Shown here piece after piece: positions 16,711-57,393 of a stretch of 64,000 nt of DNA. The position numbers were made by a program, and so were the translations under genes. Under the pieces are notes generated by a model that worked only from the letters and a program-made list of their open reading frames with translations, had not been told where the DNA came from and searched no databases. The stretch spans positions 24,800,001 through 24,864,000 of the forward strand of contig OZ249448.1 in the NCBI GenBank assembly GCA_965235115.1, written 5' to 3'. This stretch comes from Laetmonice hystrix. Its lineage: Eukaryota. The stretch's first letter is position 1. Each line of letters starts with the position of its first letter.

Positions 16711-17450
16711 CATCTTCCTCCTGACTTCCAGTATCTCAGAAGCGACCCCTGGTGGAGCTCTTGATCTCCTCGCACCCAGATGACCTCCCCGATGACCTCA
16801 CATACCACGGGGACCCAGAACCACTACTCACCCTTCCCGCCCACATGATCAAGGCAACTTCCACCTTCAATACGCCAAACCTTGTATCCGACATTTTACT
16901 AAAAGAGCGCCCACGTATCTGGAGTTAACAGTTGAAAGTATCCACATAATTTTAATGGTAGCCACCGACATGCAAGTTGCGCATCAGGTATTTTTTTGTT
17001 TCTCAATATTAGCTTTCTAACAGAAGATTTTAAAACATTTTTCGTACCAACAGAACCAGATTGGCGTCAACACCACCACGACAACCCCACACCACCCCGC
17101 GCCGATCCCCAGTCTTGTATTTACCCTCGACTGTATAACCAAACAAGGACTGGCCACACCAGACATACAGACAGACCACGCACAGCTCGCTCGGCGCACA
17201 TTTTATGCCAACAATGCATCTTTTTCTCTCTATTCCCATCGGTCAATTGGCGCTGAGCTTGATTTAATGTGGCCAGGCTGGAGCGGGGGTCTGTGTGTGG
17301 GAGGTGGCTTGTGTGTGTGTAGGGGGGGGGGGAGTCTGTGTGTGGGTGGGAGCTACAGTGGTAGACGCCGGCGCTAGCGTTCACTCAGCGGGCTCTGAGA
17401 ATGGCTTGAATTAGTTCACATAGAATCTGTGCTAAACAACAGCGAAATAG

Positions 17451-18546: not shown

Positions 18547-21288
18547 AGAGCCTGCAGCCAACCCGGCACCAGGTCTGATGGAGCCTGGAGCCAACCTGGC
18601 ACAAGGTCTGTGGGTTGTGAGAGCCTGCAGCCAACCTGGCACAAGATCTGAGGGTTGTGAGAGCCTGCAGCCAACCTGTCACAAGGTCTGAAAGTTGTGA
18701 GAGCCTGCAGCCAACCTGGCACAAGGTCTGAGGGTTGTGAGAGCCTGCAGCCAACCTGGCACAAGGTCTGAGGGTTGTGAGAGCTTGCAGCCAACCTGGC
18801 ACCAGGTCTGTGGGTTGTGAGAGCCTGCAGCCAACCTGGCACAAGGTCTAAGGGTTGTGAGAGCTTGCAGCCAACCTGGCACAAGGTCTAAGGGTTGTGA
18901 GAGCCTGCAGCCAACCTGGCACAAGGTCTAAGGGTTGTGAGAGCTTGCAGCCAACCTGGCACAAGGTCTAAGGGTTGTGAGAGCCTGCAGCCAACCTGGC
19001 ACAAGGTCTAAGGGTTGTGAGAGCCTGCAGCCAACCTGGCACAAGGTCTAAGGGTTGTGAGAGCCTGGAGCCAACCTGTCACAAGGTCTGAGGGTTGTGA
19101 GAGCCTGCAGCCAACCTGGCACAAGGTCTGTGGGTTGTGAGAGCCTGCAGCCAACCTGGCACAAGGTCTGTGGGTTGTGAGAGCCTGCAGCCAACCTGTC
19201 ACAAGGTCTGAGGGTTGTGAGAGCCTGCAGCCAACCTGGCACAAGGTCTGAGGGTTGTGAGAGCCTGCAGCCAACCCGGCACCAGGTCTGATGGAGCCTG
19301 GAGCCAACCTGGCACAAGGTCTGTGGGTTGTGAGAGCCTGCAGCCAACCTGGCACCAGGTCTGTGGGTTGTGAGAGCCTGCAGCCAACCTGGCACAAGGT
19401 CTGAGGGTTGTGAGAGCCTGCAGCCAACCTGGCACAAGGTCTGTGGGTTGTGAGAGCCTGCAGCCAACCTGGCACAAGGTCTGTGGGTTGTGAGAGCCTG
19501 CAGCCAACCTGTCACAAGGTCTGAGGGTTGTGAGAGCCTGGAGCCAACCTGTCACAAGGTCTGAGGGTTGTGAGAGCCTGGAGCCAACCTGGCACAAGGT
19601 CTGAGGGTTGTGAGAGCCTGCAGCCAACCTGTCACAAGGTCTGAGGGTTGTGAGAGCCTGCAGCCAACCTGGCACAAGGTCTGAAAGTTGTGAGAGCCTG
19701 GAGCCAACCTGTCACAAGGTCTGAGGGTTGTGAGAGCCTGCAGCCAACCTGTCACAAGGTCTGAGGGTTGTGAGAGCCTGCAGCCAACCCGGCACCAGGT
19801 CTGATGGAGCCTGGAGCCAACCTGGCACAAGGTCAGCCAACCTGTCACAAGGTCTGAGGGTTATAAGAGCCTGTAGCCAACCTGGCACAAGGTCTGAGGG
19901 TTGTGAGAGCCTGCTGCCAACCTGGCACAAGGTCTGAGGGTTGTGAGAGCCTGCAGCCAACCTGGCACAAGGTCTGATGGAGCCTGGAGCCAACCTGGCA
20001 CAAGGTCTGAGGGTTGTGAGAGCCTGCAGCCAACCCGGCACAAGGTCTGTGGGTTGTGAGAGCCTGGAGCCAACCTGTCACAAGGTCTGAGGGTTGTGAG
20101 AGCCTGGAGCCAACCTGGCACAAGGTCTGAGGGTTGTGAGAGCCTGCAGCCAACCTGGCACCAGGTCTGTGGGTTGTGGGAGCCTGGAGCCAACCTGGCA
20201 CCAGGTCTGATGGAGCCTGGAGCCAACCTGGCACAAGGTCTGAGGGTTGTGAGAGCCTGCAGCCAACCCGGCACAAGGTCTGTGGGTTGTGAGAGCCTGG
20301 AGCCAACCTGTCACAAGGTCTGAGGGTTGTGAGAGCCTGGAGCCAACCTGGCACAAGGTCTGAGGGTTGTGAGAGCCTGGAGCCAACCTGGCACAAGGTC
20401 TGAGGGTTGTGAGAGCCTGCAGCCAACCTGGCACCAGGTCTGTGGGTTGTGAGAGCCTGCAGCCAACCTGGCACAAGGTCTGAAAGTTGTGAGAGCCTGC
20501 AGCCAACCTGGCACAAGGTCTGAAAGTTGTGAGAGCCTGCAGCCAACCTGTCACAAGGTCTGTGGGTTGTGAGAGCCTGCAGCCAACCCGGCACAAGGTC
20601 TGTGGGTTGTGAGAGCCTGCAGCCAACCTGTCACAAGGTCTGAGGGTTGTGAGAGCCTGCAGCCAACCTGGCACAAGGTCTGTGGGTTGTGAGAGCCTGC
20701 AGCCAACCTGGCACAAGGTCTGAGGGTTGTGAGAGCCTGGAGCCAACCTGTCACAAGGTCTGAGGGTTGTGAGAGCCTGCAGCCAACCTGGCACAAGGTC
20801 TGAGGGTTGTGAGAGCCTGCAGCCAACCTGGCACAAGGTCTGAGGGCTGTGAGAGCCTGCAGCCAACCTGGCACAAGGTCTGTGGGTTGTGAGAGCCTGC
20901 AGCCAACCTGGCACAAGGTCTGTGGGTTGTGAGAGCCTGCAGCCAACCTGGCACAAGGTCTGTGGGTTGTGAGAGCCTGCAGCCAACCTGGCACCAGGTC
21001 TGTGGGTTGTGAGAGCCTGGAGCCAACCTGGCACCAGGTCTGTGGGTTGTGAGAGCCTGGAGCCAACCTGGCACCAGGTCTGTGGGTTGTGAGAGCCTGG
21101 AGCCAGCCTGGCACACGGTCTGTGGGTTGTGAGAGCCTGGATCCAACCTGTCACAAGGTTTGTGGGTTGTGAGAGCCTGGAGCCAACCTGTCACAAGGTC
21201 TGATGGAGCCTGGGGCCAACCTGGCACAAGGTCTGATGGAGCCTACAGCCAACCTGTCACAAGGTCAGCCAACCTGGCACAAGGTCTG
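18547..21288. repeat. 40-bp minisatellite, ~70 units with interspersed variants
   Basis: GAGCCTGCAGCCAACCTGGCACAAGGTCTGAGGGTTGTGA; explains all ORFs 18402-21227. Confidence 0.98.
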
Positions 21289-30268: not shown

Positions 30269-30788
30269 CTCAGCCTGCACCGTTCAACCTGCTCACTGAT
30301 CACGTTAGGGCACAAATAATTCAACATCCGGCCTCTTTAAAACACTGCTGACAGCTGATGGCTTCCGAAGGTAAACGAACGTGTCGCCACTGCTATTGAA
30401 ACGCTGCCGCTGCTAGGGAAACGTGGGGCGCTGCTATAGAAACGACCTGTACACACCGGGACGGGCCCACGACAAACGGGGTTCGGTGGCCGGCGTCTTG
30501 CTCCACTGCACCCTTTGAGGGGAGTGCTCATTGAGAGCAGGGTACAAACCTGCTACCCCCCCCCCCCCCCACACACACACACCAGCGACTGACCACCAAA
30601 CGCGTTCACACGCAGCGTGAACGCTGCCCGGTACGTTAGAAATGAGAGGACGACGGCGACAGCTCCGATAAAAATGCCCAGTTCTAACAGGGCGGCCTCC
30701 CACACACCTGCGCTCCTTTCACGGCCATCTACCCTAACCAGTCCCCTTACACCGACTGCCACACGCCAGAAACTCAAACAACTTTCAG

Positions 30789-33439: not shown

Positions 33440-34200
33440 CGCAACCGGAAATCGCCCTGGACCACTGCGTGACCTCTGCGTGACCTCTAACAATATCAAA
33501 CATGATGGACATATTACAAATGATGTTTTTTAATATTGGTAGGACGTAAGTCACCAGTGAGAACCTCCATGATGTCACGTGACTGCCACAACATCACGTG
33601 ATCAATGGCACGTGGGCGTGTTCTCCTCGGAGCGGTGTGAGTGAGAACATAATGTGATCTCGTATGGCCGTAAAAAGGCCTGCCGAACGCTGGAACGTTT
33701 AGTAGATGCCATTTAATGTACTCCAGCATCTACCCCACTCAGGGCGAGGCTGGAGTTTAACGCTTCCTGTACGTGAGGCTGACTGCCTGCCGGAAACATG
33801 CGCGAATCATCTATCCGAAGTTTCTCGATTCAGGGACGCTGGGAACTGAACCCTACTTCCGGTTTTCTGGGCACACGGCTTTCGAGGGAAATTTTCGGGG
33901 GATATTATTTACGGCGGCCATCCCACACTGTCAAACCTTAGTGGGGACCCTAAACACCAACGGCCATGCCACCATTCAATGGGGTCCTTTGATTTGTCGC
34001 TGAATGCCCGTATGTTTTACCGCCTGGTCCCCTGCCAAACAGACGCTTCCGCTATGTTAGACCAGGTGCTTGCTAATTTCACTGTTGGAAAACCGCCAAA
34101 CGGAAGGAAGCGATTAAACTCCAAGAACTTCCGCTTCCGTTGCGTTGGTCAGCGTCAACGGAGTGACCGATCTCTGCTTGGAGCGTGGCCAACATGGCCA
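33440..34200. promoter_or_regulatory. CpG-rich promoter-like segment (ETS CCGGAA/CTTCCGG, two TCACGTGA, CAACATGGC)
   Basis: Motif clustering and visibly higher CpG density; no TSS data. Confidence 0.3.
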
Positions 34201-34496
34201 TGCGTGATACAGACCGTAGCCTTTCGTAGGGACCAATGACACTCGAAAGCGCTCTCTTCGATTAGCCTTTACCAGGCTCATTATACGTAGTCAATATAGA
34301 CATGGGGACCAGGCTATTACTGCCTTCGCCAGTAATAATTACCCCTCCCCCCTCACACACAGTCCGAGAGCAGAACGACTGATGCTAACAGATATACTGG
34401 TATACAAAAATCAGAGTTTGGAGCTCGTAGAGGACCGAATGTCTAAACGGACATGTGGAGGACGGAAAGGTTAATCCTAGTCGTTTTGTTGGACGT

Positions 34497-34604
34497 ATTG
34501 AACACAGGACTGAGGGGCCCGTTCAAACTGCTTCAATAAACAGAGAACCTATTGAACACAGGACTAAGGGGCCCGTTTAAACTGCTTCAATGAACAGACA
34601 ACCC
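34497..34604. repeat. 54-bp tandem, 2 copies
   Basis: ATTGAACACAGGACT(G/A)AGGGGCCCGTT(C/T)AAACTGCTTCAAT. Confidence 0.85.
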
Positions 34605-35188
34605 ATTACGATGAACAGTTTATGATATAAGCTCGAGACGTCCCTTGTGTAGGGCAATACGTGACGTCAGATTCTGTGTTGCTATTGGAAACACGTGCCG
34701 AGAACGTGCTTCGTTACCAAAGTATGGCCAGGATGAACATGAAAGCGATACCGAATGACAAGATACGAGAGATCCTGGCATGTCTCAATCAGCGGCTGAG
34801 TCAACAATCATCTCACAGTACCCGCCAATCTGTATCGGTGACTTTTTATCCCAGGTTTTACAGTACAGCGAGCGATAATATAGCACTTCAACAATACCGG
34901 TCCGGCAAACTGTTGATAAAATTGAGTTTTAATTTCTATAGCTGGAAACAAATTCAGCTTTGTCCGCAGGTCCCCCAAGGCAAGCATTAGCCGACCTGGA
35001 CAAATTGAAACCGCCCATTGATCCAATAAACCCTTTCAACATTTTGTTACAATGTGAGCGATTTCATTATTACCACGATACATTAATTACTGCGTCCATA
35101 CTTAAGAAGTAAATTAAGAATGGGTGGCACGCTATTAATTGGGATAGATTTCCATTACTAGCATTAGCCCATGTTTTCAGACACTTAC

Positions 35189-35369
35189 GGCCATATCATG
35201 CGGCCCTAGCCCCAGTTTAGCATGGCAGACATGAGCCAGCCTTGCCATACCACATTGTCTTTCACAAAGCGTTCCAACGGACATGGCAGGATTTCGAGCT
35301 GCACCACTCGTCCCACCAGGGGGCGCTCCATTGCTGTCACTGATTACGTTAAACACTGGAACAATGGCA
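35189..35369 (-). CDS. Tentative minus-strand exon AIVPVFNVISDSNGAPPGG...GLGPHDMA
   Basis: Minus strand: ttttgtatttactaacatccag| (branch-like TACTAAC) and gcc|gtaagt; one frame open. Confidence 0.3.
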
Positions 35370-36425
35370 CTGGATGTTAGTAAATACAAAAAGGGCCAGC
35401 GGGGCCGTCTGGAGGATTTATCATTCGGTCTTGATGGCATCTTACAAACACAGTAACACTCATTGTGTTAGAGTCAGCCAAAGGAAAAGTAGCACCTGTT
35501 GGTTCTCCATTTTCTTCATTAAAGTTCAGAATATGTTCTCAATCTGACATTTTGTTAAATGACATGCTTTCCGCTTCAATGTTCTCTCTGTGAATGAATT
35601 CTCTACAGATGGTCGCAAAATGTTTATATTCAGTTGAATTACAGCTGTCATCCATGCTGCCTCGCTGAAACTTGCGCGGCAAAATAAACGTGATTTCTAC
35701 CATCTCTGAATAAATACAGCAGATGTGGGCCTCCCATACATTTAATATTCGTACGTAGCCAACATAGTAACAAACCACGTAAAAATGTCCCCGCCCGACC
35801 TAAGAAATATCCCCGACCTGGAATTATTTCATGTTTTTTTCATGTTTTAGTTTTCAATTTCTTGCTTGAAATTTTTTTTTGAAAATTTCTATTGTCTTTT
35901 TGTACCTTCCTAACTTGCCTTCTGACCACGAATACCATAGATGTCTTCTTCCACCAGCCACGCCGCCACTCCAGTCATAGAATAAAAACTATTTTAAAAA
36001 CCCTCTCGCCCGACATGGAAATATTGGAAGAGGTGGACGATAGAAAAGTAATTCTTTTTAGACAGAATACACTGACCCCTTAATCTTTCTGAAAGTAGGG
36101 GGAGTGATCCTGACCTCTAAAGTCGTTTCCTTTTAGATATCGTCTCCGAACAATCTCAAATAACTCACAAATGGCTTTCAATATTTCAGAGCGGCAGTAT
36201 TTTAGATTTATTGTCTTTCTTGAACGTTTTAACATTTAAAAAGGGAGGTGACTGTAGAGTAATTACATGGTAATTAACAACAGCAATGTTCTTATCCTGA
36301 GTTTCCTGGAGAGTCTACATGACTTGGAAATAAGCTAAATGATTGATAGTCCAAACTTTCGGGCCTAGATCTGATATTAACCTCTATCAATCATTTATCG
36401 GCAATAAGAATAGAAGGAAATGATG

Positions 36426-36728
36426 AATCCGAGCTCGGCGCCAAAGAGCCGGGATCATTTATGGAGGAGAAACGAGGGGTTTGCGTAGGTATATTAGTAT
36501 AGGTACTCGCACATATGTATCTAGGACCCATGTCGTGTGCTCAGTATGTATTGTCGAGGTAATGTAAACAATAGCTGTACTCCCGTTAACCACCATCTTG
36601 GTTCTCGCCTCTCGCGCGGTCTGGGTCGGAAATGACGAAGGCGACTTGGGAGACGATCCGGAGGGTATAAATACAACCGAGCAGAAGAGTCGAGTTCTCT
36701 ACCTTTGGAAGCTTCGTGGCAATCAGAC
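36426..36728 (+). repeat. Repeat A1 (left terminus of split-direct-repeat element)
   Basis: Identical to 41810-42112; contains TATAAA at 36666-36671. Confidence 0.95.
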
Positions 36729-38267
36729 TGATTCGTTCCCCACACATCGGGTGAGTTCGTTCTATGGTTGGGACTTCGTTTCAAGTATACGGTGGAACGT
36801 GGTTTGTCGACTGTTTCTTATATTTGCCTTGTGTTTGACACCTATATGCAGGTGTTATGTCTAAAACAGTTCCAGTTATTCGTCTTTCGAGGCTGTATTA
36901 TAGACCAGTACCCAGTATTTATGTGTGTCTGAAATAGTCACATGCAGTGTTGCAGGACGCACAGTCGCTTCCACGTGGTCGACCTGACCTTTGTGGTTCG
37001 GGCTCGGCTAGCCTACTTGAAGCTCCTGGTAGACAATTTGTGTTACGAGTTTGTAGTTATTTTAGTTCACCACACATTGAGGGCGACTGACGACGTCGGC
37101 GGTGCTATGTTGTGTAATTTTGTGTACGTATTTGTCCCAGAATGGTAGTGGGGGTACGATAATTTCAGTTTTGTTTTACCGTGGTTTACTCCGTGTTGAG
37201 TAGGGTAATAGCGTTCGGTACCAAGGTTGAGCTTATACAACGGTTTGTCCTGCCACGTGGTGTATCATGGTGGGGGTAGGCTCGTAAAAGTGTGAGGTAG
37301 GCCTACATTGTCGTGGAGTTGGTGTTTTTCGCTAGTCCTCACTATGTGGGGTTGAAGGTTGGTAGAAGTTATGTTGTGTTACTTGACCAGTGAACTGCTG
37401 TGACACGCCGGGTGTTCTTTAATTTTTCTAGTCCCGTCTTATATAGGCGTTTACTGCTGCTCCTAATTGCAACAGTTGGTATGGTTTTCGAAGTGCCCTC
37501 CCTAGATTATGTTAAATACAGTGTTTATCGCTTGGCGGCAATGCTTCTTGCCGTTTGCTTGGGGTGCTTTTTGGATGTGGGTATGCTGCGCTGGTATTCG
37601 AGCGGTACGTGGTGCTGTTATTCGGGTAGAAGTATTTATTTACGGTGGACAGATTAATCTGGATGTATTGGCACCAGCTTTAACCTGATAAGCTTTGGAG
37701 ATGGTTTGATGAATGTAATTTTACCTGACTTGTTGGACTCTAATTTAGTGTCGCTGATAATTTTCTTTCTCTTGTAGCCAACGAGTGGCTTATCCCTGAT
37801 ATTATATCTGGATTTGGACAGGTGCCCACTGTTCAGTGTGGTTCATTGATGCAGTCGCATAGTAGGGGGGATTTCGTCAATGTTATTTTGTATGTAGTAG
37901 TTTGGTATTCACTCCTTGTGGTTGCTTTGTTTTGAGTCTATCCATTTGTAAGTATTTGATTTTGTATTTTTGAGTTTAGTTGTCCCCTGAACCTTACTAG
38001 GCAGACTACCTGTCCCTCTGTTTCAGGATTTACATCATTTAATCTAATTGCCCCTGATTAATAGGCGTGTAGATTTAGCTACCACCTCATCTGAAAGGTT
38101 TTGTCGTTTAAGTATTTTGCCAATAGTTTGTAGACCCACCCCACCCCACCCTTCCTCGTGTTAGTGAGGTGTGTGTGTGTGTTGGAGGAGGGGGGTGTGG
38201 GGGGGGGGGGTGTTGTGTTTACGAATAACGGGGCTCTGCTGATGTGGGCTTAATGTGGTGTAACATA

Positions 38268-38905
38268 CGGTGTGTGGTCCCTTCGGTTCCGCTTTCCCTT
38301 GTGGTTGTGTTAACTTGGTTGGGGGATGGGGCCGTGTTCCGTGGGGTTGACGGTGTGTGGTCCCTTCGGTTCCGCCTTCCCTTGTGGTGGTGTTAACTTG
38401 GTTGGGGGATGGGGCCGTGTTCCGTGGGGTTGACGGTGTGTGGTCCCTTCGGTTCCGCCTTCCCTTGTGGTTGTGTTAACTTGGTTGGGGGATGGGGCCG
38501 TGTTCCGTGGGGTTGACGGTGTGTGGTCCCTTCGGTTCCGCCTTCCCTTGTGGTTGTGTTAACTTGGTTGGGGGATGGGGCCGTGTTCCGTGGGGTTGAC
38601 GGTGTGTGGTCCCTTCGGTTCCGCCTTCCCTTGTGGTTGTGTTAACTTGGTTGGGGGATGGGGCCGTGTTCCGTGGGGTTGACGGTGTGTGGTCCCTTCG
38701 GTTCCGCCTTCCCTTGTGGTTGTGTTAACTTGGTTGGGGGATGGGGCCGTGTTCCGTGGGGTTGACGGTGTGTGGTCCCTTCGGTTCCGCCTTCCCTTGT
38801 GGTTGTGTTAACTTGGTTGGGGGGTGGTGTCGTGTTCCGTGGGGTTCTGTCCTCCCTTGATAGGATTACCTTGGGGTCGACGGTGTGGTCCCTTCGGTTC
38901 CGTCA
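38268..38905. repeat. 83-bp G/T-rich minisatellite inside the element, 7 copies plus a degenerate 8th
   Basis: Unit CGGTGTGTGGTCCCTTCGGTTCCGCC...GGGGTTGA at 38268, 38351, ... 38766. Confidence 0.95.
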
Positions 38906-39726
38906 TCCCCGTTATATTACAAGTTGTTTTACGGCAGATGTGCCTGGTTTCCGCAGGCTGCCACATCCTTTGGTGCATTGTACTTCTAGTCCCCATGATG
39001 GGTGATCGATGGGTACCTATGTATATGGATGCGAGGGGATGTCCCCTCCGCTCTGCCTTTTTCGAGGATTAGGGCTGAATCTTTATTTTCTTGTTTTAAA
39101 GTTGTTCAAGAAGTCATTTTAGGTCGGTAGGTTGTGTTAGTAAGTCAGGTCACTTCTACTGTATTTTAGTGTGTACTATGTGTTTACGCTTTTTGGATCT
39201 GCCTCGCCTTCGGGCTATGGTGGGACCGTCTGCACTTAAATATCTTGTTCATTAACTTTGTAAATTATCTGTCAAATTTTCAATGTACTATTTTGTTAAT
39301 TTGGTAATATTAGGTATCTTCGATAAAATTATTAACAATGTCAGTCAGGGTTGTCACCTTAGTTAAATGTTGCCTATTTAGTTTTTACTTTGTGTTGAGG
39401 GCTATAATTATATTATATATTTATCGTAATTTCGTCTAACTATATAATTTCAATGTTAACTATAAAGGTAATAAGTATTATCGTATTATTGGGTGGTTAA
39501 TTTGATTTGTCATAATGTATAAGCGGAATTTATGCAATTTTTTGATATTGAGTTGATTGTATTTGTCATAGGGCAGTAACTATTATTCCTCTGCCAGATG
39601 TTTCTTCGGTCTTTTGTTATTTTCCATTTTAGGTGGACGACAGGCTGAGCATATGGCTTTGGTGCATGGGTCGTGGGACGTATTCTATATTTACACATTC
39701 ATTTGTACTGATAAGAGCTGATGGAA

Positions 39727-40780
39727 GGCTGAGTATGTGTCTTTGGTAGACTTTGGAGGTTTACTGATGTGGGTAAGGTCAATTCCCCGTGTTTTGAACC
39801 TGTGATGTTGTTCGAAGGCTGAGTGTTGATTTATATTATTCAAGGTTCGGTATGGTTCAGAGGTTGTTTTGGTTTAGAATTTCCTTTAGTTACCATCTCT
39901 ATGGAATGTCTTTCTTGTAGGTATGTGGAATACTTGCCGCGTAGAGGCTTAACCCATGTTTGTGGTTGGTCTCGGATATCAAGGCCTTTAACTTGTTCAT
40001 GTGATCCTGTGGTTATTATGTGTATGTGATGTGGTTATGTGGTTATTATGTGTATAGGCTTAACCCATGTTTGTGGTTGGTCTCGGATATCAAGGCCTTT
40101 AACTTGTTCATATGATCCTGTGGTTATTATGTGTATGTGATGTGGTTATGTGGTTATTATGTGTATGTGTATATACGGAGATCAGTTATCTTTTTAAGTT
40201 TTGGGAACCCTCCCGGGCCCAAGAGATCCGATGTTGGATGTATGTTGGACTCCCAAGCGTGAAGCGTTTCCACGGTTTTTGACTACGACTTTCATGGTTC
40301 CTGATACGTTTGGCTGAGTATGTGTCTTCGGTTGACTTTGGAGATTTGCTGATGTGGGTAGGTCAATTCCCCGTGTTTTGAACCTGTGATGTTGTTCGAA
40401 GGGCTGAGTGTCGAATTATATTATTCAGGGTTCGGTATGGTTCAGAGGTTGTTTTGGTTTAGTGGTTCCTTTAGTTACCATCTCTATGGAATGTATTTCT
40501 TGTAGGTATGTGGAATACTTGCCGCGTATAGGCTTAACCCATGTTTGTGGTTGGTCTCGGATATCAAGGCCTTTAACTTGTTCATATGATCCTGTGGTTA
40601 TTATGTGATGTGGTTATGTGGTTATTATGTGTATGTGTATATACGGAGATCAGTTATCTTTTTAAGTTTTGGGGAACCTCCCGGGCCCAAGAGATCCGAT
40701 GTTGGATGTATGTTGGACTCCCAAGCGTGAACCGATTCCACGGTTTTTGACTACGACTTTCATGGTTCCTGCTACGTTTG
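39727..40780. repeat. Internal direct duplication within the element (39727-40311 vs 40312-40780)
   Basis: Both copies begin GGCTGAGTATGTGTCTT and end CATGGTTCCTG(A/C)TACGTTTG; the first has an extra ~100-bp internal tandem duplication; scattered substitutions. Confidence 0.9.
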
Positions 40781-41540
40781 CGCGTCCTTCACCTCCAGTA
40801 TTTGTTATTCCAGTAGTCTTCCCTTTTTACGTTACCTTATGCTTACGTTACGATCCGTGTATCATTAAATGTTGGGCTCTGTAGCTGTCTGGTGGGTACT
40901 AGTTTGGTACCGTACAAAGTGGTAGGTAAGTGCTCGGGGGCGGCTAGATAGACGAAGCGTTGAAGGAGGTGGATGAAGTAAGCTTTAATTGGAATGTTGT
41001 CCGGTGCAGTGACGAGGCAGCTTTGTCGCCCGGTTCAGTGACGAGGAAGTTTGGATTGTTGCCCGGTTCGGTTATTTATTATTAAATATTTATAGTATGG
41101 TCCCAGGTGGTAGAATGGGATACCGTCACGTTTTTCCACCAGTTTCTCAGTCTATCACAATTTCCCAGGATAAGTAAGTATGGTGTAATGGAGTTTAATG
41201 GTGGGTGCTTCCTGTTTGGTCAAGCAGCTGGGTGTTATAACTTGTTAACCTGACGTTATGATGTTGACTCCAAGGATCTAAGGTCTTCTTCCGTACGTCT
41301 TAGGATTCAAAGCCTTGATATGCTTGTTGCAGGTACACCAGATGCCCCTAATCGGACTGGATGATGATGGGTTCCGCTATCCGTTCGTTTAGGCCAGGAG
41401 ATGATCTGTGCCTAATTTCCAAGTTGTGTCTGACGGTGATGCGTAGATTTGGCTCCTGGTGCGGTGTCAGCGGGTCGCGTTAGGAGTCTTTTCTCCTGCC
41501 TTCTTTGGTGGCTCCAGCTTCATCTTCGATTCCGCTTAGT

Positions 41541-41812
41541 GGCATTGTCTCCACCTAATAAGGCATTACTATACATATATCTATGTATTTTGGACTATGT
41601 ATTTCCATATAATGTATTATCGGTTATGTATTATATTACTTAGTATTGTTATGTTGTTACATATATCAGTTACACCTTATATAGATTTATCATTTACCAT
41701 ATTATAATGTTTGTAGAGTCCCCCATTGCATGGGGTGATCAACGGGTTACTATGTGAATAAAATGTAACCTACAGCAAAGCATTCCCGTTCTCCGAGTTT
41801 GACTGCATAAAT
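41541..41812 (+). repeat. Repeat B1
   Basis: Identical to 42275-42546; AT-rich; CCCCAT-TGC-ATGGGG hairpin 41721-41735; AATAAA 41757-41762. Confidence 0.95.
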
Positions 41813-42112
41813 CCGAGCTCGGCGCCAAAGAGCCGGGATCATTTATGGAGGAGAAACGAGGGGTTTGCGTAGGTATATTAGTATAGGTACTCGCACATAT
41901 GTATCTAGGACCCATGTCGTGTGCTCAGTATGTATTGTCGAGGTAATGTAAACAATAGCTGTACTCCCGTTAACCACCATCTTGGTTCTCGCCTCTCGCG
42001 CGGTCTGGGTCGGAAATGACGAAGGCGACTTGGGAGACGATCCGGAGGGTATAAATACAACCGAGCAGAAGAGTCGAGTTCTCTACCTTTGGAAGCTTCG
42101 TGGCAATCAGAC
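41810..42112 (+). repeat. Repeat A2
   Basis: Second copy of A, overlapping B1 by AAT; TATAAA 42050-42055. Confidence 0.95.
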
Positions 42113-42274
42113 GGCCCACCTCCGCCCCGACTCCTCCATGTTTCAACGCCTTTGCCTGGTTTAAATTATGTTTTTATGTAGACCTACTGGGTTTGGCTTG
42201 GGGTCAGCATGGCTGCCCGAGTTCTTTTCTCAGTTTGGTTGGATAGGGATGTATTTGGGTTCCTGGATGTTGTG

Positions 42275-42546
42275 GGCATTGTCTCCACCTAATAAGGCAT
42301 TACTATACATATATCTATGTATTTTGGACTATGTATTTCCATATAATGTATTATCGGTTATGTATTATATTACTTAGTATTGTTATGTTGTTACATATAT
42401 CAGTTACACCTTATATAGATTTATCATTTACCATATTATAATGTTTGTAGAGTCCCCCATTGCATGGGGTGATCAACGGGTTACTATGTGAATAAAATGT
42501 AACCTACAGCAAAGCATTCCCGTTCTCCGAGTTTGACTGCATAAAT
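42275..42546 (+). repeat. Repeat B2 (right terminus)
   Basis: Second copy of B; AATAAA 42491-42496; ends GACTGCATAAAT. Confidence 0.95.
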
Positions 42547-43191
42547 ACTGTCCTATAAAACAACGATTGCTTGAGAACGTGGGCCCCAGATGTCTGAGAG
42601 GGAGAAAACGCAAGCCACCTCGCTTGCTTTACTCGGCAAACCCGCCACTCAGATCCTGACTGTGCCATGATACATCACCCGGATTATCGGACGTTAATCT
42701 CTTTGTCTGGGACCGACATCTTCCACGTCTGTGCATACGTTGACCTACTTACAGCATAAAACATTGAGGGCGACATCTCAAGGTCACCCCTGCCGCCAGA
42801 TCGACAAATAACCAGACTGTACCTTCCGGGCCACCGTAGTTCCCACGTCACATACAACAGTGGCTGACCATAGTGGCTTTGTTTCTCGTTATATTCGGTT
42901 ATATTGTTAAAAGTGAATCATAACATTGAATTTCTCATAACAAATGTGTATTGTCGTCGGTCCGTTTGGACTGGAAGGTGTCCTATTCTAATCTATTCTA
43001 TTCCTATTCCTATTCTAATTTCCTGACCAGGAAACAACGTTGACCGGTCCAAGCAATAGCGGTTGTATCGCGTGAGCAGTGGAGTGATTTCACGGGTGTA
43101 ACACTACCTGACCTGACTCCTCCCTCCTATAGGTAAAACGTGGCTAAACTCTTGTAAAACGTTCTGCCACACCCACAACAATCACGTCCAC

Positions 43192-43344
43192 NNNNNNNNN
43201 NNNNNNNNNNNNNNNNNNNNNNNNNNNNNNNNNNNNNNNNNNNNNNNNNNNNNNNNNNNNNNNNNNNNNNNNNNNNNNNNNNNNNNNNNNNNNNNNNNNN
43301 NNNNNNNNNNNNNNNNNNNNNNNNNNNNNNNNNNNNNNNNNNNN
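43192..43344. other. Assembly gap (153 N)
   Basis: N run. Confidence 1.
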
Positions 43345-43499
43345 GAGAGGGATTTCCCCGTATAGATGTAAATTCATAAAAAGTAAAAAGAATCGCAGAG
43401 ATGGGTCCTAGCTATGAGTGCGTAATAATATATTCGAGGAGGGTGAAAACCTTTCAATTCCTCGTCCCAACCCTAGCATGCGGCCACAGTGGGGGTGGT

Positions 43500-43530
<31 letters not shown>

Positions 43531-43875
43531 TAGGGGTTCCCCACTGCCGACAATGGGATGAGGGGACAGTGGGGTCCACTGGGAGACACCGCACGACCTC
43601 GTTCCCACAGTCTGAAACTCCCAACACGAGTTGACAGTTCTACTGCAGGGTCTTTAGATGTCACCATCAACACAATAAAGTCTTTACATGTCAACCTCAT
43701 GTCACAACATGTCCATATCGGCAGCCAATCACCACTAATTATTTCATTGGTGGAGTCTGCTAACGAGTGGGTCCCGTCAGGTCACAGTTACTGTGACGTC
43801 ACAACCCTGTGTCCGTCCGTCAAAATGAGTTCAGTCACGTGATCCGTAAATCCGTCCAGTATGGAGATATTCTAG

Positions 43876-44042
43876 CATGGAAACTTAGGAATATCCTGGA
43901 ACAAACTTAACTGCACATTTGGAATGGATTGTTTCAAGGTGCGCCCTCTTTATTGTCCTTTCTTTGAGGTTAAAAGATTATGCATCTCCTTCCTCAAAGA
44001 CACCATGTTTTCTATCACACTGACTGATGTCTCAGACCTTAG
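43876..44042 (+). CDS. Tentative exon HGNLGISWNKLNCTFGMDCFKVRPLYCPFFEVKRLCISFLKDTMFSITLTDVSDL
   Basis: 167-nt single open frame ending ag|gtaatt; alternative acceptor at 43969. Confidence 0.3.
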
Positions 44043-44666
44043 GTAATTTAGTAAATTAATACAGCCTCATTGACATTTTTACTAATTGCTCCAATAAAAC
44101 AATGAACTTTTTCTGTTCATACAACTTGTCAGTATGCCCCCCAGCGCCCCCAAGTGTTGGCGACCCGCCCGGGGTCCTGCAGTTCTGGTATTCCCCCACC
44201 CTCTGACCCCATAGCCCCAGAAAGGTCAGCAGTAATATAGCAGTGCTATTCTGGGTGTCCTATATAACTGGATGACCTCACAGACTCCTGACATGGAAAT
44301 AACGACAGATTCCATAACAACAACTGGGGAGTACAGCGGTCCCACCAACCTCCGTACAGTCGCTCAGGACATCAGTTCATATCTCAACATGTAGCTTCTT
44401 CATTCTCCCCCAACTTACCGACCAAAACCATTTCAGCCATCTCTGAAAGTAATATTTTATATAGATTAACATCTGCCTTTTCTCTGGCATTAGCCGATGC
44501 AATATCTTATCTTAGCACCTGCCTCTGAGACTGACGGCCGTACGTGTATTCTCTGATAACAGACCATGAACCTGGATTCACTCTCTGCCACCACCGAGTC
44601 GGGAACTCAATAAACATTCCGGCATCATTAGTTCATGCTGCAACAGGACAAACTGAACTAATCACA

Positions 44667-45940
44667 TGGACGTCACTAAGACTGCTACAATAGGACAGCT
44701 TGAATCAATCAAATGGACGTCACTAAGACTGCTACAATAGGACAGCTTGAATCAATCAAATTGACGTCACTGAGACTGCTGCAACCGGACAGCTTCAATC
44801 AAATGGACGTCACTGAGACTGCTACAATAGGACAGCTTGAATCAATCAAATGGACGTCACTAAGACTGCTACAATAGGACAGCTTCAATCAATCAAATGG
44901 ACGTCACTGAGACTGCTGCAACAGGACAGCTTCAATCAATCAAATGGACGTCACTGAGACTGCTGCAACAGGACAGCTTGAATCAATCAAATGGACGTCA
45001 CTGAGACTGCTGCAACAGGACAGCTTGAATCAATCAAATGGACGTCACTGAGACTGCTGCAACCGGACAGCTTGAATCAATCAAATGGACGTCACTAAGA
45101 CTGCTGCAACAGGACAGCTTGAATCAATCAAATGGACGTCACTGAGACTGCTGCAACAGGACAGCTTAAATCAATCAAATGGACGTCACTAAGACTGCTA
45201 CAATAGGACAGCTTGAATCAATCAAATGGACGTCACTAAGACTGCTGCAACAGGACAGCTTGAATCAATCAAATGGACGTCACTAAGACTGCTACAATAG
45301 GACAGCTTGAATCAATCAAATGGACGTCACTAAGACTGCTACAATAGGACAGCTTGAATCAATCAAATGGACGTCACTGAGACTGCTGCGACAGGACAGC
45401 TTCAATCAATCAAATGGACGTCACTGAGACTGCTGCAACAGGACAGCTTGAATCAATCAAATGGACGTCACTAAGACTGCTGCAACCGGACACCTTGAAT
45501 CAATCAAATGGACGTCACTGAGACTGCTACAACCGGACAGCTTGAATCAATCAAATGGACGTCACTGAGACTGCTGCAACAGGACAGCTTGAATGAATCA
45601 AATGGACGTCACTAAGACTGCTGCAACCGGACACCTTGAATCAATCAAATGGACGTCACTGAGACTGCTGCGACAGGACAGCTTCAATCAATCAAATGGA
45701 CGTCACTGAGACTGCTACAACCGGACAGCTTGAATCAATCAAATGGACGTCACTGAGACTGCTGCAACAGGACAGCTTAAATCAATCAAATGGACGTCAC
45801 TAAGACTGCTGCAACCGGACAGCTTGAATCAATCAAATGGACGTCACTGAGACTGCTGCAACAGGACAGCTTGAATCAATCAAATGGACGTCACTGAGAC
45901 TGCTGCAACAGGACAGCTTGAATCAATCAAATGGACGTCA
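44667..45940. repeat. 47-bp minisatellite, ~27 copies
   Basis: ATGGACGTCACTGAGACTGCTGCAACAGGACAGCTTGAATCAATCAA. Confidence 0.98.
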
Positions 45941-46924: not shown

Positions 46925-47890
46925 GATCACTAAGGTCATCACAAAGGACATCACTAAGGTCATCACAAAGGACATCACTAAGGTCATCACAAAGGACATC
47001 ACTAAGGTCGTCACAAAGGACATCACTAAGGTCGTCACAAAGGACATCACTAAGGTCATCACAAAGGACATCACTAAGGTCATCACAAAGGACATCACTA
47101 AGGTCATCACAAAGGACATCACTAAGGTCATCACAAAGGACATCACTAAGGTCGTCACAAAGGACATCACTAAGGTCGTCACAAAGGACATCACTAAGGT
47201 CGTCACAAAGGACATCACTAAGGTCATCACAAAGGACATCACTAAGGTCGTCACAAAGGACATCACTAAGGTCGTCACAAAGGACATCACTAAGGTCATC
47301 ACAAAGGACATCACTAAGGTCATCACAAAGGATATCACCAAGGGGATAACCAAGGAGATCATTGAGGTCATCACTAAGGTCATCACTAAGGTCATCACCA
47401 AGGACATCACCAAGGGGATAACCAAGGAGATCACTAAGGTCATCACCAAGGACATCACCACGGGATAACCAAGGAGATCACTAAAGTCATCACTAAGGAC
47501 ATCACCAAGGGGATAACCAAGGAGATCACTAAGGTCATCACTAAGGACATCACCACGGGATAACCAAGGAGATCACTAAGGTCATCACTAAGGACATCAC
47601 CAAGGGGATAACCAAGGAGATCACTAAGGTCATCACTAAGGTCATCACCAAGGGGATAACCAAGGAATCATTGAGGTCATCACCAAGGACATCACCAAGG
47701 GGATAACCAAGGAGATCACTAAGGTCATCACTAAGGTCATCACTAAGGTCATCACTAAGGTCATCACTAAGGTCATCACTAAGGTCATCACCAAGGGGAT
47801 AACCAAGGTCATCACTAAGGTCATCACTAAGGTCATCACCAAGGGGATAATCAAGGAGATCACTATGAGCGTCACTAAGGACATCACTAA
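46925..47890. repeat. 12/24/48-bp hierarchical minisatellite
   Basis: ATCACTAAGGTC and ATCACAAAGGAC 12-mers; explains ORFs 46862-47896. Confidence 0.97.
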
Positions 47891-48134
47891 GCACATTAAT
47901 GATTCGGTTGTCCGTGGACCTAACCAGCTGGGACAGGGCGTATAAAATAAGAACCAGTCACACCATATACCATCCCTTAGTTACTCTTACACTGTCTCGA
48001 AAAATGAGGTTCCGTCAGATTAATGTCAGAGCGGACCGTCTCTGACAGATTCTGTCCCAACCCGCTGTCGTGTCCACCTGATGAACGAACCGGCCCCTCT
48101 CAGGGACACTCTCCACGCACATTCTTCTTCACAG

Positions 48135-55342: not shown

Positions 55343-56851
55343 GTTTATACCGACAGGGACACTCCTCTAAAGTTGTGTTTATACCGCCCGGGACACTCCT
55401 CTAACTGTGTTTATACCGCCCGGGACACTCCTCTAACTGTGTTTATACCGCCCGGGACACTCCTCTAACTGTGTTTATACCGCCCGGGACACTCCTCTAA
55501 CTGTGTTTATACCGCCCGGGACACTCCTCTAACTGTGTTTATACCGCCCGGGACACTCCTCTAACTGTGTTTATACCGACAGGGACACTCCTCTAACTGT
55601 GTTTATACCGACCGGGACACTCCTCTAACTGTGTTTATACCGCCCGGGACACTCCTCTAACTGTGTTTATACCGCCCGGGACACTCCTCTAACTGTGTTT
55701 ATACCGCCCGGGACACTCCTCTAACTGTGTTTATACCGCCCGGGACACTCCTCTAACTGTGTGTATACCGACCGGGACACTCCTCTAACTGTGTTTATAC
55801 CGCCCGGGACACTCCTCTAACTGTGTTTATACCGACCGGGACACTCCTCTAACTGTGTTTATACCGCCCGGGACACTCCTCTAACTGTGTTTATACCGCC
55901 CGGGACACTCCTCTAACTGTGTTTATACCGCCCGGGACACTCCTCTAACTGTGTTTATACCGCCCGGGACACTCCTCTAACTGTGTTTATACCGCCCGGG
56001 ACACTCCTCTAACTGTGTTTATACCGCCCGGGACACTCCTCTAACTGTGTTTATACCGCCCGGGACACTCCTCTAACTGTGTTTATACCGCCCGGGACAC
56101 TCCTCTAACTGTGTTTATACCGCCCGGGACACTCCTCTAACTGTGTTTATACCGCCCGGGACACTCCTCTAACTGTGTTTATACCGCCCGGGACACTCCT
56201 CTAACTGTGTTTATACCGCCCGGGACACTCCTCTAACTGTGTGTATACCACCCGGGACACTCCTCTAACTGTGTTTATACCGCCCGGGACACTCCTCTAA
56301 CTGTGTTTATACCGCCCGGGACACTCCTCTAACTGTGTTTATACCGCCCGGGACACTCCTCTAACTGTGTTTATACCGCCCGGGACACTCCTCTAACTGT
56401 GTGTATACCGCCCGGGACACTCCTCTAACTGTGTTTATACCGCCCGGGACACTCCTCTAACTAAACTGTGTTTATACCGCCCGGGACACTCCTCTAACTG
56501 TGTTTATACCGCCCGGGACACTCCTCTAACTGTGTTTATACCGCCCGGGACACTCCTCTAACTGTGTTTATACCGCCCGGGACACTCCTCTAACTGTGTT
56601 TATACCGCCCGGGACACTCCTCTAACTGTGTTTATACCGCCCGGGACACTCCTCTAACTGTGTTTATACCGCCCGGGACACTCCTCTAACTGTGTTTATA
56701 CCGCCCGGGACACTCCTCTAACTGTGTTTATACCGCCCGGGACACTCCTCTAACTGTGTTTATACCGCCCGGGACACTCCTCTAACTGTGTTTATACCGC
56801 CCGGGACACTCCTCTAACTGTGTTTATACCGCCCGGGACACTCCTCTAACT
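55343..56851. repeat. 32-bp near-perfect minisatellite, ~47 copies
   Basis: ACTGTGTTTATACCGCCCGGGACACTCCTCTA. Confidence 0.98.
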
Positions 56852-57393
56852 ATGTTGAAACCTACCTTGGATTATGATGATGAAAGACAGAGGTGAAACG
56901 GACACCTGACGTCTGCACACGGAGGCAGGCGTGGCATGTTGTTGCCATGGCAATTATAGAATACATATTCCATTCCCATTTATTACCAGACAACACCACC
57001 TTTCACAACTAAAGATGGACACCCATCAGTTGAGTCACGCTAACAGTATCCAATTCACCACGACCCGGCCAACACATGTCATATCTATATGCATCACGTA
57101 GTTTTGCTTTGGTTTGTTCACTGTGGCATCCCTATTGTGGCAGCTTTACTAGTTCATAAAACACCAAATTAAAGAACCTTTCGTTGCACAAACTAGATTA
57201 GTTCTCATGAGAAGAACCATAAAAAGTTAATTACCTTTGCTTGGATAAGATTCACCTCAGCTGGCTGTCGGTGGCGGCAGTGGAAACCTTTGATGTCACA
57301 TATTATCCTCACGTGACCATGACGTTCTTTCACAGACATGCGCAGTGAGCGGACGCTGATACTCTGTGACGTCACAGTTGACGTTTTGAACAG

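What the first reader, a model, noticed from the sequence alone, without database searches (positions are those of the whole stretch)
36426..42546. 6.1-kb split-direct-repeat element (A1...B1A2..B2) invisible to the ORF track
Seen: 303-bp A at 36426-36728 and 41810-42112; 272-bp B at 41541-41812 and 42275-42546; B1 and A2 are fused; a 162-bp spacer separates A2 and B2; both pairs look identical by eye. Established: the A...BA..B layout is the hallmark of PAT-like and Ngaro tyrosine-recombinase (DIRS order) retrotransposons. Inference: a recently active member or derivative of such a family.
Basis: partly seen in the sequence, partly recalled or inferred. Interest (0 to 1): 0.85.

Follow-up and report, generated by a model that had tools for sequence, protein, structure and literature searches.

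The report
ORF-less split-direct-repeat retroelement (DIRS-type)
A 6.1-kb stretch has the repeat layout and 3-base junction signature of tyrosine-recombinase (DIRS-order) retrotransposons but encodes no protein, so it is most likely a young non-autonomous passenger of such elements, a known but rarely described kind.

Summary
A (303 bp) at 36426-36728 equals 41810-42112. B (272 bp) at 41541-41812 equals 42275-42546. Both pairs are 100% identical. B1 and A2 overlap by AAT, and a 162-bp spacer separates A2 from B2.

The same AAT sits at the left end, the internal B|A junction and the right end, and there is no target-site duplication. This matches the published 3-bp circular-junction model for DIRS-order elements. 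A carries a TATA box 62 nt before its end. B carries AATAAA 55 nt before its end. A transcript would therefore lack both tips and need B1A2 to restore them.

The 4.8-kb body has no ORF above 104 codons and a random stop density. It has no Pfam trace of RT, RNase H, tyrosine recombinase or Gag. About 1.8 kb of it is tandem repeat.

So this is not an autonomous Ngaro or PAT member. It is best read as a recently inserted non-coding derivative moved in trans, like TOC1 of Chlamydomonas or SIRE of Trypanosoma cruzi.

I found no second copy and no partner element, in the window or in any searchable collection. Mobility and superfamily are therefore untested. A head-to-tail pair of two elements, a local duplication or a mis-assembly remain possible. 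Interest is moderate to low.

The parts
36426..36728 (+). A1, the left terminal repeat (303 bp; GC 50%, CpG o/e 1.19). Its first three bases, AAT (36426-36428), are the terminal trinucleotide.
   Evidence: Identical to 41810-42112; composition.
36666..36672 (+). TATA-like box (TATAAAT) 62 nt before the 3' end of A1. The inferred transcription start is about 30 nt downstream, still inside A. The same box in A2 is at 42050-42056.
   Evidence: Motif scan; sequence. It is the only TATA match in A on either strand. The start site is inferred, not shown.
36729..41540 (+). Non-coding body (4812 bp), G+T-rich on the + strand (A 18.0, C 17.3, G 27.6, T 37.1%).
   Evidence: No ORF above 104 codons. 63 stop-free pieces of at least 45 aa gave no RT, RNase H, YR or Gag match in Pfam. 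Skew is present in 24 of 24 bins of 200 bp.
38184..38930 (+). 83-bp tandem array inside the body. The core is 38267-38846 (7.0 copies, 98% matches), with degenerate copies on either side. It is preceded by a (GT)n(G)n tract at 38164-38210.
39727..40780 (+). Two tandem copies of a unit of about 585 bp (93-97% identical), containing a 111-bp tandem at 39941-40166.
41541..41812 (+). B1, the internal copy of the right terminal repeat (272 bp, GC 32%). It carries AATAAA at 41757-41762, which a full-length transcript must read through.
   Evidence: Identical to 42275-42546. The motif position is derived (42491 minus 734).
41810..41812 (.). AAT shared by the end of B1 and the start of A2. This is the internal copy of the circular-junction trinucleotide.
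   Evidence: alignment of the three junctions.
41810..42112 (+). A2, the internal copy of A, fused to B1.
42113..42274 (+). 162-bp spacer between A2 and B2. It has the same G+T bias as the body but no sequence similarity to it.
   Evidence: Composition. Smith-Waterman score 13 against a shuffle mean of 12.9. No BLAST hit elsewhere in the window.
42275..42546 (+). B2, the right terminal repeat. AATAAA at 42491-42496 lies 55 nt before its end. The last three bases, AAT (42544-42546), are the terminal trinucleotide.

Best explanation

Proposed mechanism, inferred from the published models for these families:
1. RNA polymerase II starts about 30 nt before the end of A1, downstream of the TATA box at 36666.
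2. It reads through the body, B1, A2 and the spacer, and the RNA is polyadenylated inside B2 after AATAAA at 42491.
3. The RNA therefore lacks most of A and the tip of B.
4. A reverse transcriptase supplied by an autonomous relative elsewhere in the genome copies the RNA.
5. The internal B1A2 copy serves as the template that restores and joins the missing ends into a circle junction, ...CATA-AAT-CCGAG...
6. The partner's tyrosine recombinase then crosses this junction with a genomic AAT.

This leaves AAT at both ends and no target-site duplication, which is what is seen: the left flank reads ...ATGAAT|CCGAG and the right end reads ...CATAAAT|ACTGTC.

Shown directly: the repeat anatomy, the three AAT junctions, the placement of the signals, the lack of coding capacity, and the compositional unity of body and spacer. 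Inferred: transcription, reverse transcription in trans, the circular intermediate, and recent insertion. The insertion age rests on 0 differences in 575 bp of repeat, which gives a 95% upper bound on divergence of about 0.5%.
For: - Exact SDR layout A1-body-B1A2-spacer-B2. The literature gives this as diagnostic of Ngaro, PAT and VIPER.
- AAT is present at the left end, the internal junction and the right end, and no longer duplication flanks the element. Published model: integration recombines the 3-bp circular-junction sequence with an identical genomic sequence and makes no TSD. The commonest junction in DIRS1-like elements is AAT (PMC3266345), and the element ends up flanked by the trinucleotide (PMC7192593).
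- The left flank matches the end of B at 5 of 6 bases (ATGAAT against ATAAAT).
- TATAAAT is the only TATA match in A, on the + strand 62 nt from its end. AATAAA lies on the + strand of B, 55 nt from its end. The reverse complement of A has no poly(A) signal.
- The body and the spacer share a strand bias that stops at the element's borders: 24 of 24 bins have T>A and 22 of 24 have G>C, against 15 of 102 flank bins with both. This points to one unit of separate origin.
- There are precedents for non-coding relatives. TOC1 is called a 'non-autonomous DIRS retrotransposon' (PMC9940879). SIRE corresponds to the A2-unique-B2 part of VIPER (PMC6681497).
Against: - No reverse transcriptase, RNase H, tyrosine recombinase or Gag is present, not even as a fragment.
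- No second copy of A, B, spacer or body occurs in the window. No autonomous YR element occurs in the window.
- Nothing related was found in the protein collections, or in metagenome, prokaryote-genome or viral contigs. None of these collections is expected to hold this eukaryote's non-coding DNA, so the absence is weak evidence.
- A 3-base match has a 1 in 64 chance, and a microhomology-mediated tandem duplication would leave the same three junctions.
- The poly(A) motif in AT-rich B is expected by chance about 0.5 times.
- The G+U-rich sense strand is unusual for a retroelement.
Confidence: 0.6

Rival explanations
1. The locus is a head-to-tail pair of two separate non-autonomous elements that share termini: a long one (A-4812 bp-B, 5384 bp) and a short SIRE-like one (A-162 bp-B, 734-737 bp). 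A circle would have integrated by tyrosine recombination at the end of a resident copy. The chemistry and helper are the same as in the best explanation, but the internal B1A2 would then be a boundary between elements, not a part of one element.
For: The two units have the same ends and unrelated interiors. SIRE of T. cruzi is exactly the A2-unique-B2 unit of VIPER, and its origin is debated (PMC6681497). DIRS-1 inserts preferentially into pre-existing copies (PMC7192593). Each unit carries its own TATA box and poly(A) signal.
Against: Without an internal BA copy, a transcript that starts inside A and ends inside B could not regenerate its ends. The SDR layout as one unit is the documented norm. 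The body and the spacer share the same unusual strand bias, as expected of parts of one element.
Confidence: 0.15
2. The structure is not a mobile element. It arose by a microhomology-mediated tandem duplication in a region prone to tandem repeats, followed by replacement of one interior. Alternatively it is an assembly artefact, such as a mis-join or a collapsed or expanded repeat.
For: About 29% of the window is minisatellite, with more than 30 unrelated arrays, so the region duplicates readily. A duplication through an AAT microhomology would give the same three junctions. An N run lies 646 bp to the right of B2. The structure is single-copy in everything that could be searched.
Against: A tandem duplication gives identical interiors, whereas here they are 4812 and 162 bp with no similarity above shuffles. 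The break points of similarity are exact at both A ends and both B starts, so a precise replacement would be needed. The strand bias marks body plus spacer as one foreign unit with sharp borders. The TATA and poly(A) signals fall where the retroelement model needs them.
Confidence: 0.12
3. The element is a copy of an autonomous Ngaro or PAT element whose RNA or cDNA was hyper-edited (A to G and C to U on the sense strand). Editing would have destroyed the ORFs, while the repeats stayed identical because they are templated from one another.
For: The body is strongly and uniformly depleted of A and C on the + strand. The SDRs are identical although the interior is ORF-less.
Against: About 1.8 kb of the body is tandem repeat (83-bp array, 585-bp duplication), which does not look like former coding sequence. 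A, which is part of the same RNA, shows no bias. No Pfam trace remains in 63 pieces.
Confidence: 0.05
4. The element is a rearranged LTR retrotransposon derivative (LARD or TRIM-like) with BA as the LTR.
For: It has direct repeats of a few hundred bp and a non-coding interior.
Against: The two ends differ (A on the left, B on the right). Both outer 'LTRs' would have to be truncated at the same internal point. There are no TG...CA termini: BA would begin GGCATT and end CAGAC. There is no 4-6 bp TSD. The bases after A1 (TGATTCGTTCC) are not a tRNA primer-binding site. The 20 bases before B1 are only 30% purine, so there is no polypurine tract.
Confidence: 0.03

Closest known systems
Ngaro-like, PAT-like (echinoderm or Toc form) and VIPER-like SDR retrotransposons of the DIRS order
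   Same: They share the A1-internal-B1A2-(short unique)-B2 layout with identical pairs. The internal repeats lie near the 3' end. There is no TSD, and a trinucleotide is shared by the termini and the junction. Repeat sizes are comparable: DIRS-53_XT of Xenopus has A 236 bp and B 152 bp, both 100% identical (PMC9210276).
   Different: Those elements carry Gag, RT/RNase H (plus a methyltransferase domain in PAT) and a tyrosine recombinase in 4-7 kb. This one carries none. Its interior is G+T-rich, non-coding and partly tandem repeat.
TOC1 of Chlamydomonas reinhardtii
   Same: The literature calls it a non-autonomous DIRS retrotransposon (PMC9940879). From my memory of Day et al. 1988 (EMBO J 7:1917; the paper was not held), it is about 5.7 kb with no long ORF. 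Its left end is repeated internally, fused behind a copy of the right end, and a short unique stretch of about 120 bp precedes the terminal right repeat. That is the same A...BA..B plan and a similar size.
   Different: No sequence relation could be tested. The host differs: the window is 47.6% GC and gene-poor, unlike that alga. TOC1 is multi-copy and was caught transposing, whereas this element is known from one copy.
SIRE of Trypanosoma cruzi
   Same: SIRE is a non-coding unit made of the VIPER 5' repeat, about 30 unique bp and the 3' repeat. This is the A2-unique-B2 block (PMC6681497), which corresponds to 41810-42546 here (A2, 162 bp, B2).
   Different: SIRE occurs free-standing and in many copies. 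Here the block is seen only attached to the long unit.
DIRS1-like elements
   Same: The 3-bp junction logic is the same, and AAT is their commonest circular-junction sequence (PMC3266345).
   Different: They have inverted terminal repeats and an internal complementary region. No inverted repeat of at least 40 bp exists here.
LARD, TRIM and SINE-type non-autonomous retroelements
   Same: They work in a similar way: a non-coding RNA keeps only the cis signals and borrows the enzymes of an autonomous partner.
   Different: They use different termini and different integration chemistry (DDE integrase or target-primed reverse transcription, both with a TSD).

Membership tests
DIRS order, SDR type (PAT-like / Ngaro-like / VIPER-like) | Split direct repeats A1-internal-B1A2-B2 with A1=A2 and B1=B2 | tested here: met
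   303-bp and 272-bp pairs are 100% identical, and B1 is fused to A2.
DIRS order, SDR type (PAT-like / Ngaro-like / VIPER-like) | No target-site duplication; the same trinucleotide at both termini and at the internal (circular) junction | tested here: met
   AAT is at 36426-28, 41810-12 and 42544-46, and no longer flank repeat exists. Caveat: the chance of this match is 1/64, and a microhomology duplication would give the same pattern.
DIRS order, SDR type (PAT-like / Ngaro-like / VIPER-like) | Encodes reverse transcriptase and RNase H | tested here: not met
   The longest stop-free stretch is 104 codons. There is no RVT or RNase H match in 63 pieces of at least 45 aa.
DIRS order, SDR type (PAT-like / Ngaro-like / VIPER-like) | Encodes a tyrosine recombinase | tested here: not met
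   No Phage_integrase-type match and no ORF to hold one.
DIRS order, SDR type (PAT-like / Ngaro-like / VIPER-like) | Methyltransferase domain present (PAT) or absent (Ngaro, VIPER), which decides the superfamily | not testable with these tools
   There is no coding sequence in this copy, and the source genome cannot be searched for the partner.
DIRS order, SDR type (PAT-like / Ngaro-like / VIPER-like) | Dispersed copies with the same termini and different flanks | tested here: inconclusive
   There are none in the window and none in the collections searched. Those collections do not cover this genome's non-coding DNA.
Non-autonomous DIRS-order derivatives (TOC1-like, SIRE-like) | DIRS-type termini combined with loss of all element proteins | tested here: met
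Non-autonomous DIRS-order derivatives (TOC1-like, SIRE-like) | An autonomous partner in the same genome with matching termini | not testable with these tools
   Only this 64-kb window of the genome is available. No YR or RT sequence occurs in it.
DIRS1-like | Inverted terminal repeats plus an internal complementary region | tested here: not met
   No inverted repeats of at least 40 bp in 34000-45000.
LTR retrotransposon derivatives (LARD/TRIM) | The same LTR at both ends, TG..CA termini, a 4-6 bp TSD, a PBS and a PPT | tested here: not met
   The ends differ (A against B). There is no TG..CA, no TSD, no PBS-like TGG after A1, and the 20 bases before B1 are 30% purine.
Crypton (YR DNA transposon) | A YR gene and no long terminal repeats | tested here: not met
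   There is no YR and long split repeats are present.

The most novel reading that the evidence does not exclude
This may be one copy of a long-lived, entirely non-coding lineage of split-direct-repeat retroelements in a large, repeat-rich eukaryotic genome. That would be the DIRS-order counterpart of LARDs or SINEs, a class for which only TOC1 and SIRE are on record. Surveys anchored on protein domains miss such elements by design. The element keeps only the cis parts (A, B, the B|A junction and the spacer). Its uniform G+T-rich sense strand would then be the accumulated imprint of RNA- or cDNA-stage mutation without coding constraint.
Probability: 0.3. Interest if true: 0.5.

Novelty: new member of a known kind. 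Interest (0 to 1): 0.33.

Why it matters
The replication of tyrosine-recombinase retrotransposons is still largely a model. Which sequences are needed in cis has been tested only for the internal complementary region of DIRS-1 (PMC7192593). A young element that retains nothing but the split repeats, their junction and a short spacer would define a natural minimal substrate for that machinery. It would also flag a class of repeats that domain-based surveys overlook. For example, PMC3783388 analysed only elements with a detectable protein domain. For annotation, 36426-42546 should be masked as a DIRS-order-like non-autonomous repeat and not treated as unique intergenic DNA. If no other copy exists, the finding is only a local curiosity.

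Tried and rejected
- **Coding capacity.** I tested six-frame stop-free stretches under the standard code and four variant codes. The variant codes lengthen stretches in several frames of both strands at once, which is not the pattern of a gene. Pfam on 63 pieces of the element found nothing beyond chance.
- **Partner element or any gene in the window.** Pfam on 125 further ORFs gave only low-complexity or sub-threshold matches from minisatellite ORFs. There were no tRNA or Rfam hits, and therefore no hammerhead or retrozyme signature.
- **Other copies elsewhere.**
  - Word-indexed protein search with the ORF across the end of A: none.
  - Exhaustive HMMER search of 1.84 billion representatives with the 79-aa ORF inside A: four low-complexity, multi-stretch hits only.
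  - Junction 20-mer in metagenome contigs: one hit, L001, which shares only the 20-mer and is a chance match.
  - Prokaryote genome contigs and viral contigs: none.
  - Exact look-up of two window ORFs to identify the source organism: not on record. The organism stays unknown. It is a eukaryote with GC 47.6%, CpG o/e 0.66 and no telomere-type repeats.
- **Spacer as a deletion remnant of the body.** Rejected.
- **RNA structure** of the 83-bp unit, the spacer, the junction and the end of A1. No z-score was below -1.3.
- **Minus-strand orientation.** Less likely, because the reverse complement of A has no poly(A) signal. However, on the minus strand the termini would read ATT, the commonest DIRS1-like terminus.
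- **Polarising substitutions in the internal repeats.** The sample was too small, and my 83-bp unit comparison included out-of-register flanking units, so I discarded it.
- **Literature not held.** The TOC1 paper, the Ngaro paper and the Poulter and Butler review were not in the library.


Full report
**Observation.**
- A1 36426-36728 and A2 41810-42112 are identical over 303 bp. B1 41541-41812 and B2 42275-42546 are identical over 272 bp (string comparison).
- BLAST carries A three bases further left with one mismatch: ATGAAT at 36423-36428 against ATAAAT at 41807-41812.
- B1 and A2 overlap by AAT (41810-41812). A2 and B2 are separated by 162 bp (42113-42274).
- No other copy of A, B, the spacer or the body, and no similarity of the flanks to anything else, exists in the window.

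**The junctions.** Aligning the three boundaries gives:
- left: ...GGAAATGATG-AAT-CCGAGCTCGG
- internal: ...TGACTGCATA-AAT-CCGAGCTCGG
- right: ...TGACTGCATA-AAT-ACTGTCCTAT

The element therefore begins and ends with the trinucleotide that also sits at the internal B|A junction, and there is no longer target-site duplication. This is the published expectation for DIRS-order elements. Integration recombines the 3-bp circular-junction sequence with an identical genomic sequence and makes no TSD, and AAT is the commonest junction among 28 annotated DIRS1-like elements (PMC3266345). [quoted passage not shown] A 3-base match has a 1 in 64 chance. The 5-of-6 match of the left flank to the end of B has a chance of about 0.005, but I noticed it after the fact. 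A microhomology-mediated tandem duplication would produce the same three junctions, so this feature supports the element reading but does not prove it.

**Signals and orientation.** The only TATA-type match in A is TATAAAT at 36666 on the + strand, 62 nt before the end of A. B has AATAAA at 42491 on the + strand, 55 nt before its end. The reverse complement of A has no poly(A) signal.
- By my arithmetic from the base frequencies, the TATA match is expected by chance about 0.07 times. The poly(A) motif in AT-rich B is expected about 0.5 times. The support comes from the placement of the signals, not from their mere presence.
- A transcript starting about 30 nt before the end of A1 and ending about 30 nt before the end of B2 would lack most of A and the tip of B.
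- It would still contain a complete B1A2. This is the situation the DIRS and SDR replication models were built for (Cappello model as summarised in PMC7192593). Transcription itself is inferred.

**Coding capacity.** In 36423-42546 the longest stop-free stretch in any frame is 104 codons. Stops make up 4.2-5.9% of codons per frame, as expected at random. Sixty-three stop-free pieces of at least 45 aa were scanned against Pfam. The best E-values were 0.0095-0.065, to unrelated families (a phage holin, MASE8, Wzy), with no reverse transcriptase, RNase H, integrase/recombinase or Gag match. About 1.8 kb of the 4.8-kb body is tandem repeat: an 83-bp array (38184-38930, core 7 copies at 98%) and two copies of a unit of about 585 bp (39727-40780) with an inner 111-bp tandem. 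Because the split repeats show no difference at all, the lack of ORFs cannot be decay since insertion. The element was non-coding when it arrived, unless gene conversion keeps the repeats identical.

**Compositional unity.** The body is 18.0% A, 17.3% C, 27.6% G and 37.1% T on the + strand. All 24 bins of 200 bp have T>A and 22 have G>C, whereas only 15 of 102 flanking bins show both. The spacer has the same bias (A 13.6, T 36.4, G 27.2, C 22.8%) but no sequence similarity to the body (Smith-Waterman score 13 against a shuffle mean of 12.9). A has no bias, and B has only T>A. The bias starts and stops at the element's borders, which marks body plus spacer as one unit of separate origin. I cannot explain why the sense strand is G+T-rich. 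One speculative possibility is the mutational imprint of repeated RNA or cDNA stages without coding constraint.

**What it is.** The layout is the one given in the literature for Ngaro ('A1-[ORFs]-B1A2B2', PMC8547959; 'A-pol-B-A-B', PMC3783388). It is also given for PAT and VIPER (PMC4157794; PMC6681497) and in a curation guide that notes the lack of TSDs (PMC8969392).
- The defining proteins were tested for and are absent, so I do not file the element as an Ngaro or PAT member.
- It fits the small known class of non-coding derivatives. TOC1 of Chlamydomonas is called a non-autonomous DIRS retrotransposon (PMC9940879).
- SIRE of T. cruzi corresponds to the A2-unique-B2 block of VIPER.
- From memory of Day et al. 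1988, which I could not read here, TOC1 has the same A...BA-short unique-B plan, a similar length and no long ORF.
- DIRS1-like membership fails because there are no inverted repeats.
- LTR-type membership fails because the ends are unlike and there is no TG..CA, TSD, PBS or PPT.

**Rivals.**
- (a) A head-to-tail pair of a long and a short element sharing termini. This is formally identical in sequence and uses the same chemistry. Only other genomic copies can separate it from a single SDR element.
- (b) A local tandem duplication or a mis-assembly. The window is about 29% minisatellite, with more than 30 unrelated arrays, and an N run lies 646 bp to the right of B2. Against this, the interiors are unrelated, the break points are exact, and the strand bias has sharp borders.
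- (c) A hyper-edited copy of a coding element. The internal tandem arrays, the unbiased A repeat and the lack of any Pfam trace argue against it.
- (d) An LTR derivative. This is rejected on the points above.

**What could not be done.** The source genome is not available to any tool. Two protein-collection searches with ORFs over A found nothing real. A junction 20-mer hit in a metagenome contig was a chance match. Prokaryote-genome and viral contigs gave nothing, and exact look-ups of window ORFs were not on record. The window holds no recognisable gene, tRNA or Rfam RNA. The organism is therefore unknown: a eukaryote with GC 47.6% and CpG o/e 0.66. Copy number, the partner element, the empty site and the superfamily all remain open.

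**Verdict.**
- I read this as a young, ORF-less split-direct-repeat element that works like a DIRS-order retrotransposon using borrowed enzymes (confidence about 0.6; about 0.75 if the head-to-tail pair variant is included).
- It is a new member of a known but sparsely documented kind.
- Interest is moderate to low (0.33).

Noticed in passing
window 1-64000 (e.g. 18581-21236, 55343-56856, 44636-45940, 46926-47891): About 29% of the window is minisatellite, with more than 30 unrelated arrays of period 24-112 bp. Examples are 40 bp x67, 32 bp x47, 47 bp x28 and 24 bp x40. These arrays produce the long overlapping multi-frame 'ORFs' of the ORF list. No Pfam domain, tRNA or Rfam RNA was found anywhere, so the region is gene-free and possibly subtelomeric or heterochromatic.
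   Followed up: partly
window 36336-36349 / 36384-36397, and 36418-36424: A perfect 14-bp inverted repeat, TAAATGATTGATAG / CTATCAATCATTTA, lies 29 bp left of the insertion point. Its core AAATGAT recurs directly against the element's left end, and its complement ATCATTT lies inside A at 36454-36460. This may be a preferred target context or a small foldback element, or it may be chance.
   Followed up: no
window 41806-41847: A 7-bp inverted repeat spans the junction. CATAAAT is the end of B and includes the AAT. ATTTATG lies 29 nt into A. The two arms enclose the 10-bp palindrome CCGAGCTCGG at the very start of A. This could be a protein-binding site at the circle junction. The fold z-score of the region is only -1.3.
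   Followed up: partly
window 36729-41540 and 42113-42274: There is a uniform strand bias (T>A, G>C) in every part of the element body and spacer. It is absent from repeat A and from the flanks. It is unexplained.
   Followed up: partly
window 43192-43344: An N run lies 646 bp to the right of B2. It was left untouched. It means the right-hand context of the element is not continuous in this assembly.
   Followed up: no
window 38164-38210, 43487-43536, 30553-30584, 17295-17332: There are recurrent (GT)n(G)n low-complexity tracts. One lies inside the element just before the 83-bp array, and the others are scattered in the window.
   Followed up: no
window 36751-36757 and 37763-37778: A splice-donor-like GGTGAGT lies 23 nt after A1, and an acceptor-like pyrimidine tract plus TAG lies about 1 kb downstream. 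In a T-rich strand such matches are common, and no exon structure with coding sense could be built.
   Followed up: no
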